Sequence record: MT446416.1
Direction: 5' to 3' (one strand)
Length of the DNA stretch: 64,000 nt
The notes under the pieces are model-generated. The model ran no database searches and was not told the DNA's origin. It saw only the letters and a program-made list of their open reading frames with translations. Made by a program: the position numbers and the translations under genes. Shown here piece by piece: positions 13,896-21,381 of the stretch; positions within the stretch are counted from its first letter, which is position 1; the number at the start of each line of letters is the position of its first letter.

Positions 13896-14372
13896 TTATC
13901 CTTTATTTTGTTGTACGTTATTATGTAGTACACCACAAATATAAAATAATTTACTTAGATTAGAATAACTTATGTTAGTTAGATCGTATACGAAATTTAG
14001 TTGCATATACATATCTTCAGTTAAATCATACAATGATTCGTCCACATCAATTACAATTTTCTTTGTAGTGTCAATCTCTACTTTATTAGGCCATACATCA
14101 ATAACATAATCATCACCATGTTTTTCAGATATGGAAATGAAAACATTATCGCTTTGTTCTAAAAACTCCATGTATCCGTTAAGAAATGATCCAGTTATTA
14201 TCTCATATTCACCAGAATGATACGTTGTTCTGGACTCAAATTCATTTAAAAATATCAAACGATATGTTTGGTTGATATACTCATCAATTAAACTAATAAC
14301 TTCTTTATTCATTACATTAATCCCCACAAGAAAAAAGGCCGATTCATAATGAATCAGCCTTAAGTATAACAC
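13896..14372 (-). CDS. FQxST-motif paralogue (divergent; true start probably MNKEV)
   Basis: C-terminal TEDMYMQLNFVYD. Confidence 0.65.
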   Translation of the reverse strand: MLYLRLIHYESAFFLVGINVMNKEVISLIDEYINQTYRLIFLNEFESRTTYHSGEYEIITGSFLNGYMEFLEQSDNVFISISEKHGDDYVIDVWPNKVEIDTTKKIVIDVDESLYDLTEDMYMQLNFVYDLTNISYSNLSKLFYICGVLHNNVQQNKG

Positions 14373-14552
14373 AGTAGAAGTAAAAATGTCAACTTCTAAA
14401 ATACAGTATCAAAGAGGAATAAAAAAGATACTGTTAGAGGGTAACGAATATAATGAACCATGAGGGTGATATCATTATACTTTAAAAGAGTGATAGCTTC
14501 TAGACAAAAGGAGGAATTCAGTACCGACTAGAAGCTATCCGGTTAAACGATT

Positions 14553-15827: not shown

Positions 15828-16223
15828 TTATTTACGATTCCTTGCGGAGTTCTTGTTCCTCGCTCTGAATGTTGGTGTCATCGAATGACAATTAGGGCAA
15901 AGGATTTTTAAATTCGGTAGGTCATTATTTGTAGCATCACCATCAATGTGCTCAACTTCTGTCAGTACTGCACCATCAACTGGGTGACGTTTATCCCATC
16001 CACATTCTTCACATGCAGTTCCGCGTGTTTCATGTAGATATCTTCTCACAAATGGGCATAACTGTATGGTAATACCTTTATATCCAGGATGTTCACCGTT
16101 AAGCCATTTATCAACTTTCTGTTGATATTGTAGCTCTTGTTGACATGCAACACTACAATATTTTGTTTGGCCCTTTCGAACCAATTCAATTTTACAACAT
16201 GTACAATAACGTTTTTCTTTCAT
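15828..16223 (-). CDS. HNH endonuclease
   Basis: YCSVACQ Zn finger; CEECGW...EVEHIDGDATNNDLPNLKILCPNCH; start moved to MKEKR (16223) by SD GGAG spacing. Confidence 0.85.
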   Translation of the reverse strand: MKEKRYCTCCKIELVRKGQTKYCSVACQQELQYQQKVDKWLNGEHPGYKGITIQLCPFVRRYLHETRGTACEECGWDKRHPVDGAVLTEVEHIDGDATNNDLPNLKILCPNCHSMTPTFRARNKNSARNRK

Positions 16224-16229
16224 ATAGTT

Positions 16230-16254
16230 CTCCATATATTATGGAGTATTTATA
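16230..16254 (-). promoter_or_regulatory. T4-late-type promoter plus RBS-sequestering hairpin
   Basis: TATAAATA (16247-16254) directly followed by CTCCATA-ATA-TATGGAG hairpin that contains the SD. Confidence 0.6.
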
Positions 16255-16276
16255 TGTAAGAAAAATATCATTTTTG

Positions 16277-16348
16277 AGGTCAATATCAGAATTGCACTGA
16301 TTATTCAGACTTACAAGGTCCGTGTTATACTCTTTTAACTAATCGACC
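16277..16348 (-). tRNA. trnT: tRNA-Thr(TGT)
   Basis: GGTCGAT/ATTGACC acceptor, CGGAC-CT-TGT-AA-GTCTG, ATCAG-TGCAATT-CTGAT; no encoded CCA. Confidence 0.8.
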
Positions 16349-17615: not shown

Positions 17616-17643
17616 TTTAATTTCCTATTATCATTTCGTTTTG

Positions 17644-17716
17644 CGACTCTGGAGGAACTCGAATCCCCAACCAATTAATTAACAGTTAATCGCACCACCA
17701 ATTGTGCTACAGAGTC
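17644..17716 (-). tRNA. trnN: tRNA-Asn(GTT)
   Basis: GACTCTG/CAGAGTC acceptor, ATTAA-CT-GTT-AA-TTAAT, GGGGA-TTCGAGT-TCCTC; no encoded CCA. Confidence 0.9.
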
Positions 17717-17724
17717 ATAATTAT

Positions 17725-18429
17725 TTACAAGCCATGTCTTTTCAAAAATCTAGCAAACACATTTTTGGAAGCACCATAGCTTTCATATATACTAACTTTT
17801 TTCTCACCATTAGTCAAACGTTTTTTTATATCTTCTATGTTATCTTCTAAACGTTTTACGTTTGCAAATTTCTTAGATGGTATGTTATTTTTGGTTCTAT
17901 AATTCAGTACTGAACCTGAACTGATATTCATTATTTTAGCAATTTCAGTATCTAACAAACCTTGGTTAATATATTCTTTTACCTTTTCATAATCAACTGA
18001 TGTTTCACCACCCTTTGTATTTGACGGAGGCTTGACCATTTTTTGTGAACACTCAACACTACAATATTTTGTATATGATTTCACTTTAGTATGTCTACGG
18101 GAAAATTCCGTATTACAACAAGCACATACAAATGAATCATATCGTGCTTGTACTCCATTCTTATGTGTTTTATAACGATGTTCATCAACATGAAGTATTT
18201 GTAAATTAGACAAATCATCATTTGTGAAATCATTATCAATGTGGTCTGCTTCTTCAGACTCAGTTAAATATCTACCTTCTTGTACTGCTAATAGATATCT
18301 GGCATATTGAGTACTGCTTCTATCAGTTGGAGAATTATAAAGTATTACAGTTCTTCTACCTTCAGGGTTTATCTGTATATACCCATTCTTCCAATCATTA
18401 CTATATGGATATTCTAATTTTATTTTCAT
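17725..18429 (-). CDS. free-standing HNH homing endonuclease
   Basis: YARYLLAV..GRYLTESEEADHIDNDFTNDDLSNLQIL; CACC..YCSVEC Zn finger; C-terminal HTH-like region. Confidence 0.85.
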   Translation of the reverse strand: MKIKLEYPYSNDWKNGYIQINPEGRRTVILYNSPTDRSSTQYARYLLAVQEGRYLTESEEADHIDNDFTNDDLSNLQILHVDEHRYKTHKNGVQARYDSFVCACCNTEFSRRHTKVKSYTKYCSVECSQKMVKPPSNTKGGETSVDYEKVKEYINQGLLDTEIAKIMNISSGSVLNYRTKNNIPSKKFANVKRLEDNIEDIKKRLTNGEKKVSIYESYGASKNVFARFLKRHGL

Positions 18430-18448
18430 TATTTTATTTCAAAGTTTG

Positions 18449-18753
18449 TGAGCCATCTGTGAGTCGAACACAGTACCTAACGATTCGTATAATCTATAGT
18501 TTTCACTATAGTACGGACTATATCATCATCCCATAGGGATGCCGGACGCTAATGATGTATTACACAGTAAGATCGTACTGTACCATCTAGTCTCTGCACC
18601 TTCCCAATACGCTTATTGGGCTTGGCTCAGGATTGTCATCACCATTACGTGTTAAGATTTCCCTGAATTCATCCAGTTTTTCAATCACCATTACTGATGA
18701 AAGTCACCATTGTCGATGAGTCGTTTGCTCTAACCACCGTGAGCTAATGGCCC
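18449..18753 (-). tRNA. intron-containing tRNA(CAU), probably Ile2 (exons 18716-18753 and 18449-18485)
   Basis: Spliced GGGCCATTAGCTCACGGTGGTTAGAGCAAACGACTCAT|AATCGTTAGGTACTGTGTTCGACTCACAGATGGCTCA folds as a cloverleaf; CGACTCATAATCG arm resembles enterobacterial Ile2; elongator Met not excluded. Confidence 0.85.
18486..18715 (-). mobile_element. group I self-splicing intron, 230 nt, no internal ORF
   Basis: P GAAUUCAGGGAAA 18658-18670, Q AAUCCUGAGCC 18624-18634, R GCAGAGACUAGA 18586-18597, S GAUAUAGUCC 18515-18524; P7 GACUA/UAGUC; P1 with U.G at 5' splice site; P9 with GAAA loop; terminal G. Confidence 0.92.
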
Positions 18754-18782
18754 GATTTGGGTGTTCCTAGTGTTTCATTATT

Positions 18783-18996
<214 letters not shown>

Positions 18997-19008
18997 AAAT
19001 TAATTATA

Positions 19009-19401
<393 letters not shown>

Positions 19402-20173: not shown

Positions 20174-20376
<203 letters not shown>

Positions 20377-20380
<4 letters not shown>

Positions 20381-20541
20381 ATTCGTACCAGTAGTTCAAT
20401 TAAGTACATTTCATATGCTGGATCGTTGATAAGTTTATCATACAGATGTGACTCTGAAATGAATTCCCAATGATATTTTCGCCATTTACCAAAACCTGCA
20501 TATCTAAAATTAATGTCATTCATCCATTCTTCATGTGTCAT
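20377..20541 (-). CDS. 54-aa MTHEEW microprotein 2
   Basis: MTHEEWMNDINFRYAGFGKWRKYHWEFISESHLYDKLINDPAYEMYLIELLVRI. Confidence 0.75.
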
Positions 20542-20702
20542 AATCGTACCATTATTTCAATAAAGAACCACGGATATACTTCATGGTTTATAAGTTTATC
20601 GTATTCTGCTGGGTCTGATATAATTTCCCAATGATATTTTCGCCAACTACCTATACCCGAATATCTAACATTAATGTCATCCATCCATTCTTCATGTGTC
20701 AT
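20538..20702 (-). CDS. 54-aa MTHEEW microprotein 1
   Basis: MTHEEWMDDINVRYSGIGSWRKYHWEIISDPAEYDKLINHEVYPWFFIEIMVRL; SD AAGG. Confidence 0.75.
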   Translation of the reverse strand: MTHEEWMDDINVRYSGIGSWRKYHWEIISDPAEYDKLINHEVYPWFFIEIMVRL

Positions 20703-20740: not shown

Positions 20741-21279
<539 letters not shown>

Positions 21280-21299
21280 ATCCTTAATATTATATTTTA

Positions 21300-21371
21300 T
21301 AAAGGGCCGGAGAATCGAACTCCGATTGGATTCTTAGAAGGAATCTGTTTTATCCATTAAACTAGCCCCTC
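21300..21371 (-). tRNA. trnR: tRNA-Arg(TCT)
   Basis: GATTC-CT-TCT-AA-GAATC, CGGAG-TTCGATT-CTCCG; acceptor with G.U pairs; no encoded CCA. Confidence 0.8.
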
Positions 21372-21381
21372 AGTACTAATA

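What the first reader, a model, noticed from the sequence alone, without database searches (positions are those of the whole stretch)
17725..18753. Possible collaborative homing pair: ORF-less intron plus an adjacent free-standing HNH
Seen: the intron encodes no endonuclease, but an HNH gene starts 20 nt after the tRNA 3' end and ends 9 nt before tRNA-Asn. Established: ORF-less introns can be mobilised by a neighbouring free-standing endonuclease whose site is disrupted by the intron (collaborative homing, described for cyanophage psbA/F-CphI and phage DNA polymerase genes). Inference: this HNH cuts intron-less tRNA(CAU) alleles in co-infecting relatives and the intron gives self-immunity. I do not know a described tRNA-targeted example.
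Basis: inference. Interest (0 to 1): 0.72.

Follow-up and report, generated by a model that had tools for sequence, protein, structure and literature searches.

The report
Intron-split phage tRNA beside homing nuclease
A giant E. coli phage carries a transfer-RNA gene split by a self-splicing intron, with a selfish DNA-cutting enzyme gene right after it; the two have moved between phages as one block, but the enzyme's relatives do well without any intron, so a strict partnership is unproven.

Summary
The window is jumbo coliphage TH47. On the minus strand, a tRNA(CAU) gene (18449-18753) is split after the anticodon by a 230-nt ORF-less group I intron (18486-18715). An I-HmuI-like HNH gene (17725-18429) starts 19 nt later and ends 8 nt before tRNA-Asn.

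For it:
- TH47's closest relative, Ecwhy_1 (94-98% identical flanks), lacks the intron, the HNH and TH47's tRNA-Asn allele.
- The distant phage Turkey5 (66-82% background identity) shares a 99-100% identical intron-plus-HNH block. The cassette therefore moved laterally as a unit.

Against it:
- HNH relatives sit 19-47 nt after uninterrupted tRNA genes in about nine other lineages.
- The same intron lies beside two unrelated HNH types in Klebsiella phages.
- One intron-bearing contig has a nonsense allele of this HNH.
- Two further tRNA-then-HNH pairs occur in this window.

Most likely this is a SegB-like homing endonuclease that targets tRNA genes, and the intron is dragged along by co-conversion. 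Whether the enzyme cuts at the intron site, and whether the intron gives immunity, remains untested.

The group I intron in a phage tRNA gene is unannotated in every record inspected. I found no description of one in the literature I searched.

The parts
19003..19031 (-). Sigma-70-like promoter match (TGGACA, 17-nt spacer, TATAAT, with TG) just upstream of tRNA-Ser. It is a possible start of a tRNA-Ser / tRNA(CAU) / HNH / tRNA-Asn co-transcript.
   Evidence: It is a consensus match only, and such sites are not enriched over shuffled sequence. No terminator-like site lies between it and tRNA-Asn.
18907..18996 (-). tRNA-Ser(GCU), the upstream neighbour. It and the 153-nt spacer are conserved at 95-99% across the Asteriusvirus relatives aligned.
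18716..18753 (-). 5' exon of tRNA(CAU), 38 nt, ending with the anticodon CAT. U-1 pairs with a G of the internal guide sequence in P1.
18486..18715 (-). ORF-less group I intron, 230 nt, inserted between tRNA positions 36 and 37. Helices P1-P9 are present, including P7.1 and P7.2, and the last base is G (omega G).
   Evidence: Rfam scores 100.5 bits. Boundaries come from the intron-less WPEC5 allele. 98% of cells pair; seven intron helices and three exon stems show compensatory changes, and 0 of 500 shuffles reach the observed values. The MFE fold reproduces P2, P3, P4, P6, P8 and P9.
18449..18485 (-). 3' exon of tRNA(CAU), 37 nt. No CCA is encoded. Its T-arm allele (CTGTG...CACAG) matches the Klebsiella phage Muenster rather than the closest coliphage relatives.
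18430..18448 (-). 19-nt A+T-rich spacer between the tRNA 3' end and the HNH start codon. A spacer of 19-20 nt recurs in most relatives of this HNH.
17725..18429 (-). Free-standing HNH homing-endonuclease gene ('HNH-A'), 234 aa. Residues 1 to about 135 form the beta-sheet, HNH and Cys4 zinc-finger part. Residues from about 140 to 234 form helix-turn-helix DNA-binding modules.
   Evidence: PHROG 14913, E 2.6e-56. Weak GerE and Cbp1-type HTH hits. D62 and H63 invariant. AlphaFold2 pLDDT 87. Foldseek top hit is I-HmuI, 1U3E, probability 1.0. dN/dS is 0.09-0.32. The gene is absent from near-isogenic Ecwhy_1.
17643..17716 (-). tRNA-Asn(GUU), an allele that belongs to the cassette. It differs from the Ecwhy_1 allele in the D-arm, anticodon stem and T-arm, and is 92% identical to the allele of Klebsiella phage OU509535.
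17640..18800 (.). Foreign tract relative to the closest relative, Ecwhy_1. It runs from just upstream of the tRNA(CAU) gene, through the tRNA(CAU) gene from its D-loop onward, the intron and the HNH, to the end of tRNA-Asn. The flanks on both sides return to about 96-100% identity.
17960..18900 (.). Block that is 99-100% identical to phage Turkey5, whose surrounding DNA is only 66-82% identical. One boundary falls inside the 3' end of the HNH gene.

Best explanation
The locus is a mobile 'tRNA plus homing-endonuclease' cassette in the tRNA cluster of jumbo coliphage TH47.

Shown:
1. tRNA(CAU) is interrupted after the anticodon by a structurally conserved ORF-less group I intron. Its closest relatives are introns in phage protein-coding genes, not bacterial tRNA introns.
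2. The ORF 19 nt downstream is an I-HmuI-like HNH endonuclease under purifying selection.
3. The tract from just upstream of tRNA(CAU), through the intron and the HNH, to the end of tRNA-Asn has been exchanged between phages as one block.

Inferred:
- The HNH works like T4 SegB. In a mixed infection it nicks or cuts the tRNA-gene DNA of a relative that lacks it, near the 3' end of the tRNA(CAU) gene or the tRNA(CAU)/tRNA-Asn junction where its own gene is inserted.
- Recombinational repair then copies the HNH gene together with the flanking tRNA alleles.
- The intron lies only 56 nt from the HNH start codon, so it is carried along by co-conversion (trans-homing by hitch-hiking).
- The intron persists because self-splicing keeps the tRNA functional.
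- The carrier genome is probably protected by the HNH insertion itself and by allele differences in the flanking tRNAs. The intron is not required for this, although it may add protection.
For: Intron is real and constrained:
- Rfam 100.5 bits.
- Excision is exact when compared with an intron-less allele.
- Fifteen pairs show double changes, and 0 of 500 shuffles reach the observed values.
- Nearest non-tRNA relatives are ORF-less introns in Vibrio phage terminase genes, Staphylococcus phages and a cyanophage psbA gene.

HNH is a real, selected endonuclease gene.

Block transfer:
- Ecwhy_1 flanks are 94-98% identical, yet it lacks the intron and the HNH and has different tRNA(CAU) and tRNA-Asn alleles.
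- Turkey5 has 66-82% background identity but shares a 99-100% identical block.
- The same cassette occurs in a third background in L013/L014.

The family associates with tRNA 3' ends and does not need an intron:
- RaK2, K64-1, CBB, fHe-Yen9-04, L015-L019 and L025.
- Two other tRNA-then-HNH pairs lie in this window, and both are absent from Ecwhy_1.

The intron is promiscuous in its neighbours:
- HNH-B occupies the same slot in OU509535 and L031, where the intron sits in a quite different tRNA(CAU).
- HNH-C follows tRNA-Asn' in Muenster, KP13-7, RCIP0023 and phiKp_21.

The HNH can be lost while the intron stays: L030 has TCA changed to TAA at codon 128.

Precedents: SegB recognises the tRNA T-psi-C motif and spreads neighbouring tRNA genes (PMC2330249). 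mobE drives trans-homing of a defunct intron endonuclease (PMC2790892).
Against: - No cleavage data exist, so the target site is inferred only from the insertion position and the boundaries of the exchanged tracts. Those boundaries fit a break at the intron insertion site about as well as a break at the HNH insertion site.
- At the finest scale the linkage is perfect. All five TH47-type HNH alleles (93% or more identical in protein) sit next to the intron.
- Every known copy of this intron lies within about 330 bp of some HNH gene. This hints at a real dependence of the intron on neighbouring endonucleases.
- The recombination junction inside the HNH gene of Turkey5 shows that at least one transfer went into a genome that already carried a diverged HNH-A allele. 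That is not the simplest homing scenario.
Confidence: 0.55

Rival explanations
1. Strict collaborative homing. HNH-A recognises a sequence spanning the anticodon loop of intron-less tRNA(CAU) genes and cuts at or near the intron insertion site. The intron splits that site and so protects the carrier genome. Intron and HNH therefore spread as an interdependent pair.
For: - Adjacency: 56 nt from the intron's 3' end to the HNH start codon.
- Intron and HNH transferred as one block.
- The exchanged tract in TH47 starts only about 60-85 nt upstream of the intron insertion site.
- All TH47-type HNH alleles are linked to the intron.
- An apparently 'empty' homing site exists in WPEC5, with an anticodon arm identical to the TH47 exons.
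- The arrangement has precedents in a cyanophage, T3/T7-like phages and ICP1 (PMC10448857).
Against: - About nine other lineages of the same HNH family sit next to uninterrupted tRNA genes: ordinary tRNA(CAU), 87-92-nt long-arm tRNA(CAU), a 99-nt tRNA and tRNA-Ser(UGA). They must therefore avoid self-cleavage without an intron.
- The 88%-identical allele P0002 has no intron beside it.
- The intron persists with a nonsense HNH allele and with unrelated HNHs.
- Physical linkage over 56 nt explains co-transfer without any functional coupling.
Confidence: 0.2
2. Endonuclease turnover. The intron once carried, or was served by, a different endonuclease. The tRNA(CAU)-to-tRNA-Asn interval is a hot spot where free-standing HNH genes of several families replace one another, and the present HNH-A is simply the latest occupant. 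Intron spread depends on whichever endonuclease is nearby, or the intron is now mostly inherited vertically.
For: - At least seven alternative layouts of this interval exist in Asteriusvirus and Alcyoneusvirus phages whose flanks are 95-98% identical.
- Three unrelated HNH types lie near the same intron.
- Barth et al. propose exactly this origin for 'collaborative' loci (PMC10448857).
Against: - A 230-nt intron holds no remnant of an internal ORF.
- This reading overlaps heavily with the best explanation and differs mainly in the history it assumes.
- The recent 99-100% identical block in Turkey5 shows current mobility, not only vertical descent.
Confidence: 0.15
3. Intron and HNH are functionally unrelated, and the intron reached different tRNA(CAU) genes by reverse splicing or another route that needs no endonuclease. 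The HNH may be inactive or have another role.
For: - The intron sits at the same 36/37 position in two very different tRNA(CAU) exon contexts that share little beyond the anticodon arm, Muenster/TH47 versus OU509535.
- The HNH spacer contains no obvious ribosome-binding site.
Against: - HNH-A is under purifying selection in both domains, dN/dS 0.09-0.32.
- Its presence or absence among near-isogenic phages is typical of an active selfish gene.
- Every intron copy seen has an HNH gene within about 330 bp.
- No reverse transcriptase is evident nearby.
Confidence: 0.07

Closest known systems
Phage T4 SegB, a free-standing GIY-YIG homing endonuclease in the T4 tRNA gene cluster (PMC2330249). The same paper's discussion notes that the phage T5 endonucleases F-TflI/II/IV also have their ORFs in a tRNA gene cluster.
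   Same: - It is a free-standing endonuclease gene embedded among phage tRNA genes and absent from close relatives.
- It spreads itself together with the neighbouring tRNA alleles by gene conversion.
- SegB's recognition site contains the conserved tRNA T-psi-C motif.
- Expression is probably limited by tRNA processing of a shared transcript.
   Different: - SegB belongs to a different catalytic family (GIY-YIG, not HNH).
- No intron is involved in T4 or T5.
- The target of the TH47 enzyme is unknown.
Collaborative homing of an ORF-less intron with a neighbouring free-standing endonuclease: cyanophage psbA intron with F-CphI, T3/T7-like DNA polymerase introns, and ICP1 terminase (summarised in PMC10448857, PMC6083498, PMC3984707).
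   Same: An ORF-less group I intron has a free-standing endonuclease gene immediately next to the interrupted gene, and the two are inherited as a block.
   Different: - In the described cases the host gene encodes a protein, and cleavage at the intron insertion site was shown experimentally.
- Here the host gene is a tRNA and cleavage is untested.
- Relatives of this endonuclease live next to uninterrupted tRNA genes.
- The intron consorts with three unrelated HNH types.
T4 mobE / I-TevIII trans-homing (PMC2790892)
   Same: A free-standing HNH endonuclease mobilises a neighbouring intron that cannot move itself, through co-conversion of flanking DNA.
   Different: - In T4 the intron (in nrdB) still carries a defunct endonuclease ORF.
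- Here the intron has no ORF and lies in a tRNA gene.
Bacterial tRNA group I introns: cyanobacterial tRNA-Leu(UAA) and tRNA-fMet, and Azoarcus tRNA-Ile(CAU) (PMC3984707; bioRxiv 10.1101/2020.01.27.920355)
   Same: - A self-splicing intron sits in the anticodon loop of a tRNA, with U at -1 and a terminal G.
- From memory only: the Azoarcus intron also follows the CAU anticodon of a tRNA-Ile.
   Different: - The TH47 intron has P7.1 and P7.2, and its nearest sequence relatives are introns of phage protein-coding genes. It therefore looks like a phage-type intron that entered a tRNA gene, not a bacterial tRNA-type intron.
- It resides in a virus. The 2014 review states that all phage introns then known were in protein-coding genes.
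I-HmuI, the intron-encoded HNH nicking endonuclease of Bacillus phage SPO1 (PDB 1U3E)
   Same: It is the best structural match (Foldseek probability 1.0, E 1.4e-3). It shares the elongated modular build: N-terminal beta-sheet, HNH motif and C-terminal helix-turn-helix.
   Different: - Only 15% sequence identity and a low global TM-score (0.27-0.35).
- I-HmuI is encoded inside an intron, whereas this gene is free-standing.
- This protein has an extra Cys4 zinc finger and a double helix-turn-helix tail.

Membership tests
Group I self-splicing intron (Rfam RF00028) | Covariance-model score at or above the curated gathering score | tested here: met
   100.5 bits against a gathering score of 50, E 1e-25. 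Relatives score 89-104 bits.
Group I self-splicing intron (Rfam RF00028) | U at position -1 forming a U.G pair in P1, and G as the last intron base | tested here: met
   The exon ends ...UCAU and pairs with GUGA of the intron, with the U.G pair conserved in all four variants. The intron ends ...ACG.
Group I self-splicing intron (Rfam RF00028) | Conserved P3-P9 core supported by covariation | tested here: met
   98% of cells pair. Compensatory changes occur in P1, P2, P5, P7.1, P7.2, P8 and P9, and 0 of 500 shuffles reach the observed values. Only four distinct sequences were available.
Group I self-splicing intron (Rfam RF00028) | Precise removal restores an intact host gene | tested here: met
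   The joined exons give a canonical 75-nt tRNA. The junction is identical to that of the intron-less WPEC5 allele.
Group I self-splicing intron (Rfam RF00028) | Guanosine-dependent self-splicing of the transcript | not testable with these tools
   Needs an in vitro splicing assay, or RT-PCR or northern blot of infected cells.
Bacterial tRNA-type (IC3) introns | Compact IC3 architecture and closest kinship to other tRNA introns | tested here: not met
   P7.1 and P7.2 are present and covary. The nearest sequence relatives are introns in phage terminase, DNA polymerase and psbA genes. No direct comparison with an IC3 model was run.
HNH homing endonuclease (I-HmuI-like) | HNH catalytic motif | tested here: met
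   The motif is E-A-D62-H63...N70/N75...H84. D62 and H63 are invariant and N75 is conserved at 90% or more across 36 homologues. PHROG 14913 matches at E 2.6e-56. Pfam HNH/HNH_3 is not reached by this protein itself, but PF13392 is recorded for many homologues.
HNH homing endonuclease (I-HmuI-like) | Fold similar to a characterised HNH homing endonuclease, with a separate DNA-binding module | tested here: met
   AlphaFold2 pLDDT 87. Foldseek top PDB hit is I-HmuI 1U3E, probability 1.0, E 1.4e-3, but TM-score is only 0.27-0.35. C-terminal HTH hits are weak.
HNH homing endonuclease (I-HmuI-like) | Sporadic presence or absence among close relatives at a fixed site, with converted flanks | tested here: met
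   Absent from the near-isogenic Ecwhy_1 (94-98% identical flanks), and the flanking tRNA alleles are replaced. A 99-100% identical block lies in the distant Turkey5.
HNH homing endonuclease (I-HmuI-like) | Site-specific nicking or cleavage of DNA that lacks the endonuclease gene | not testable with these tools
   Needs purified or in vitro translated protein and mapped cleavage.
Collaborative homing pair (ORF-less intron plus free-standing endonuclease) | An ORF-less intron with a free-standing endonuclease gene next to the interrupted gene | tested here: met
Collaborative homing pair (ORF-less intron plus free-standing endonuclease) | The endonuclease cleaves intron-less alleles at or near the intron insertion site | not testable with these tools
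   There are no cleavage data. The tract boundaries fit this site and the HNH insertion site equally well.
Collaborative homing pair (ORF-less intron plus free-standing endonuclease) | The intron-containing allele is resistant because the intron splits the recognition site | not testable with these tools
   Indirectly disfavoured, because relatives of the HNH sit beside uninterrupted tRNA genes.
Collaborative homing pair (ORF-less intron plus free-standing endonuclease) | Intron and endonuclease are co-inherited and co-occur among relatives | tested here: inconclusive
   Co-transfer as a block is seen. Across relatives, however, all four combinations occur and the intron pairs with three HNH types.
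SegB-like endonuclease of a tRNA cluster | Free-standing endonuclease gene inside a phage tRNA cluster that converts neighbouring tRNA alleles | tested here: met
SegB-like endonuclease of a tRNA cluster | GIY-YIG catalytic domain | tested here: not met
   The domain is HNH. The locus may work like SegB but is not a member of its family.
SegB-like endonuclease of a tRNA cluster | Recognition site that includes a conserved tRNA-gene motif | not testable with these tools
   This is inferred only from the family's constant position 19-47 nt after tRNA 3' ends.

The most novel reading that the evidence does not exclude
A true collaborative homing pair acting on a tRNA gene. HNH-A would cut the anticodon-loop DNA of intron-less tRNA(CAU) genes in co-infecting jumbo phages, and a phage-type group I intron that has colonised that exact site would shield its carrier. 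More broadly, in a tRNA cluster contested by several HNH families, the intron could act as a portable shield against endonucleases that target the anticodon arm. That would explain why every known copy lies beside one HNH or another.
Probability: 0.2. Interest if true: 0.72.

Novelty: new variant of a known kind. Interest (0 to 1): 0.55.

Why it matters
- **A gap in what is described.** A 2014 review states that every phage group I intron then known was in a protein-coding gene, despite the many phage tRNA genes (PMC3984707). My literature searches found no later report of one in a phage tRNA. This intron-split tRNA(CAU) is unannotated in all seven phage-collection records that carry it, one of which (OU509535) has no annotation at all, so tRNA counts for these jumbo phages are too low.
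- **An unusual origin.** The intron looks like a phage protein-gene intron that moved into a tRNA anticodon loop. That links two intron populations previously thought of as separate.
- **A ready experimental system.** Nature supplies a near-isogenic phage without the cassette (Ecwhy_1), an intron-less allele with identical exon sequence at the junction (WPEC5), phages with the HNH but no intron (RaK2, K64-1), phages with the intron beside other HNHs, and a natural nonsense allele. Together these could settle whether 'collaborative homing' is a real partnership or simple hitch-hiking, and how homing endonucleases shape the exchange of tRNA genes between phages.

Tried and rejected
- **IMG/VR scans found nothing.** I scanned viral contigs for the HNH and for a 45-nt intron core. 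Extra copies came instead from the protein database with contig look-ups and from one metagenome scan.
- **Sequence-level calls on the HNH were weak.** Pfam gave no HNH call on the TH47 protein. A sequence search of the PDB gave only chance hits. Identification rests on PHROGs, the homologues and the predicted fold.
- I repeated it with database homologues.
- **The Muenster spacer is not a leftover of a deleted HNH-A gene.** The 97-nt spacer between tRNA(CAU) and tRNA-Asn matches ordinary backbone sequence that lies downstream of tRNA-Asn in RaK2.
- **No second near-isogenic pair for Turkey5.** I tried JNE01 as a partner to define tract boundaries in a second background, but its tRNA region is too rearranged.
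- **No intron-less twin of the OU509535 tRNA(CAU).** The best matches in the phage collection are only 82-89% identical.
- **A simple co-occurrence statistic was rejected.** Only about three independent intron lineages exist, so genome counts would overstate the evidence.
- **Rfam's coordinates for the intron (18494-18807) were rejected.** Its P1/P2 alignment runs into an upstream hairpin.
Full report
**What is there**

The window is identical to Escherichia virus TH47, a 352-kb jumbo phage. Around the finding all genes run on the minus strand, in this order:
- tRNA-Ser(GCU), 18907-18996;
- a 153-nt spacer;
- a split tRNA(CAU), 18449-18753;
- a 19-nt spacer;
- a 234-aa ORF, 17725-18429;
- an 8-nt spacer;
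- tRNA-Asn, 17643-17716.

ARAGORN does not report the split tRNA. Rfam finds a group I intron at 100.5 bits against a gathering score of 50, but it misplaces the 5' end.

The exact boundaries come from a natural control. The intron-less allele of phage WPEC5 aligns up to 18716 and resumes at 18485, with an identical ACGACTCAT|AATCGTT junction. The intron is therefore 18486-18715, 230 nt. It is preceded by U, ends in G, and lies between tRNA positions 36 and 37. It contains no ORF. The joined exons form a canonical 75-nt tRNA. The best E. coli matches of that tRNA are annotated tRNA-Ile. That would fit a lysidine-type tRNA-Ile2 rather than tRNA-Met, but the identity is not settled.

**The intron is a constrained ribozyme of phage type**

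Four distinct versions exist: TH47 (identical in L013 and L030), Turkey5, Muenster and OU509535. On a hand-built P1-P9 model plus the tRNA stems, 98% of cells pair and 15 pairs carry changes on both sides. These include pairs in P1, P2, P5, P7.1, P7.2, P8 and P9. None of 500 shuffles, and none of the slid controls, comes close. The MFE fold recovers most helices independently.

The presence of P7.1 and P7.2 and the nearest sequence relatives both point to the intron population of phage protein-coding genes, not to bacterial tRNA introns. Those relatives are ORF-less introns that split the large-terminase gene of Vibrio phages, introns of Staphylococcus phages, and a cyanophage psbA intron. A 2014 review states that all phage introns then known were in protein-coding genes (PMC3984707). 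My searches found no later description of a phage tRNA group I intron. The annotated GenBank records inspected do not annotate this tRNA.

**The ORF is a free-standing HNH homing endonuclease**

- Pfam misses it, but PHROG 14913 'HNH endonuclease' matches residues 1-149 at E 2.6e-56.
- Many of its 62 database homologues carry PF13392.
- D62 and H63 are invariant, and N75 and the Cys4 finger are nearly so.
- The AlphaFold2 model (pLDDT 87) has I-HmuI as its best PDB match, probability 1.0.
- Residues from about 140 to 234 form helix-turn-helix modules.
- dN/dS is 0.09-0.32 in both domains, so the protein is under selection.

**Evidence that intron and HNH travel together**

Ecwhy_1 is TH47's closest relative over 22 kb: 96.9% identity over 82% of the query. 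Yet its 8.45-kb homologous segment contains no HNH at all. There, an uninterrupted tRNA(CAU) lies 4 nt from tRNA-Asn.

Differences between the two phages cluster from about 18800 down to about 17640. That tract covers the tRNA(CAU) from its D-loop onward, the intron, the HNH and the whole tRNA-Asn allele. Outside it, identity returns to about 96-100%.

Turkey5 shows the converse. It is only 66-82% identical to TH47 over 40 kb, but 99-100% identical from about 17960 to 18900. The boundary falls inside the last 230 nt of the HNH gene. A third background, Logan contigs L013/L014, carries the same cassette.

This is the pattern expected from endonuclease-driven gene conversion. It matches the published observation that nuclease genes sit at boundaries of exchange between phages (PMC10448857).

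**Evidence against a specific, interdependent partnership**

1. *The HNH family does not need an intron.* It is found after uninterrupted tRNA genes in about nine other lineages, 19-20 nt downstream in most and 26-47 nt in three (CBB, fHe-Yen9-04 and L019):
   - ordinary tRNA(CAU) in RaK2, K64-1 and CBB, and an unannotated one in fHe-Yen9-04;
   - 87-92-nt long-arm tRNA(CAU) in L015, L016, L017 and L019;
   - a 99-nt tRNA in L018;
   - tRNA-Ser(UGA) in L025/L026.

   The closest intron-less case is 88% identical in protein.
2. *The intron has other neighbours.* In OU509535 and L031 it lies in a quite different tRNA(CAU), followed in the same slot by a NUMOD4-type HNH. That HNH shares only the catalytic motif with HNH-A. 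In Muenster, KP13-7, RCIP0023 and phiKp_21 the slot is empty. There a third, unrelated HNH follows a different tRNA-Asn. The same third HNH accompanies an intron-less tRNA(CAU) in WPEC5.
3. *The HNH can decay while the intron stays.* In metagenome contig L030 the HNH has a TCA-to-TAA stop at codon 128, and the intron is identical to TH47's.
4. *Adjacency is common here.* In this window tRNA-Thr and tRNA-Arg are each followed, 40 and 33 nt later, by other HNH genes. Both are also missing from Ecwhy_1.

**Most likely mechanism**

I favour a SegB-like model. T4 SegB is a free-standing endonuclease in a tRNA cluster. Its recognition site includes the tRNA T-psi-C motif, and it spreads itself and the neighbouring tRNA genes (PMC2330249). 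By analogy, HNH-A would attack tRNA-gene DNA near the 3' end of tRNA(CAU) in phages that lack it. Repair would then copy the HNH and the flanking tRNA alleles.

The intron lies 56 nt from the HNH start codon and would be co-converted, as in mobE-driven trans-homing (PMC2790892). A promoter-like site upstream of tRNA-Ser, with no terminator before tRNA-Asn, suggests that the HNH mRNA is cut out of a tRNA precursor. The SegB paper's discussion proposes that for SegB and, citing a personal communication, for the T5 enzymes.

The steps that are shown are the anatomy, the structural constraint on the intron, selection on the HNH, block transfer, and the family-wide distribution. The steps that are inferred are the cleavage site, the direction of transfer, and the source of immunity.

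The strict collaborative reading is not excluded, and I give it about 0.2. The tract boundaries fit a break at the intron site equally well. All TH47-type HNH alleles are linked to the intron. Every known copy of the intron has some HNH gene within about 330 bp.

**Verdict**

The locus is a new variant of known kinds. It combines a phage-type group I intron in a phage tRNA gene with a tRNA-cluster homing endonuclease. Nature also provides an unusually complete set of variant phages for testing what 'collaborative homing' really means.

Noticed in passing
window 15828-16348 and 20741-21372 (minus strand): Two more tRNA-then-HNH pairs. tRNA-Thr (16276-16348) is followed 40 nt later by a 135-aa HNH (15828-16235). 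tRNA-Arg (21299-21372) is followed 33 nt later by a 174-aa NUMOD4/HNH_3 endonuclease (20741-21265). Both HNH genes are absent from the near-isogenic Ecwhy_1. The NUMOD4 one is about 81% identical to the copies in WPEC3 and JNE01.
   Followed up: partly
window 20216-20702 (minus strand): Three tandem, paralogous 54-aa ORFs, each starting MTHEEWM, lie head to tail with 4-nt overlaps. They are conserved as a triplet in Turkey5, WPEC3, WPEC5 and Ecwhy_1. Function unknown.
   Followed up: no
L015 81-167, L016 453-539, L017 2394-2480, L019 2362-2453; also annotated in JNE01 (L032 5637-5723): Unusual 87-92-nt tRNA genes with a CAT anticodon and a long variable arm, which is type-II architecture and not expected for Met or Ile. 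In L015-L017 and L019 each is followed directly by an HNH-A homologue.
   Followed up: no
L021 2280-2480 and L024 about 700-920: A roughly 200-nt non-coding stretch upstream of an HNH-A homologue folds into a long closed structure: -73.9 kcal/mol, z = -5.4 against shuffles. A TTGACA...TAAGAT promoter-like site precedes it. No Rfam family matched. Here the tRNA(CAU) lies downstream of the HNH instead of upstream.
   Followed up: partly
L030 5694-5696 (metagenome contig OEQX01000005.1): A natural nonsense allele of HNH-A, TCA changed to TAA at codon 128, between the nuclease/zinc-finger part and the helix-turn-helix tail. The intron-tRNA beside it is 100% identical to TH47's.
   Followed up: yes
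L010 1405-1482 (Yersinia phage fHe-Yen9-04): An unannotated tRNA(CAU)-like gene (GGCCCTTTACAC...GGGCCACCA), missed by ARAGORN and by the record, lies just upstream of the short HNH-A homologue g417. CBB has the equivalent tRNA annotated.
   Followed up: partly
window 18449-18753; L004 1998-2304; L033-L035 about 1200-1504: The intron-split tRNA is unannotated in all seven phage-collection records that carry it (Turkey5, Muenster, KP13-7, RCIP0023, phiKp_21, and TH47 and OU509535, which have no annotation at all). Published tRNA counts for these jumbo phages are therefore short by one.
   Followed up: yes
L002 vs L004 vs L005 (RaK2, Muenster, OU509535): These three Klebsiella jumbo phages have 95-98% identical flanks but three different fillings of the tRNA(CAU)-to-tRNA-Asn interval. 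In each, a tRNA gene is paired with a different HNH. This suggests that tRNA-plus-HNH modules are the units of exchange.
   Followed up: partly
window 14322-14397 (minus strand): A weak Rfam hit to suhB/mmgR sRNA: 23.9 bits against a gathering score of 41, E 0.2. Probably chance.
   Followed up: no
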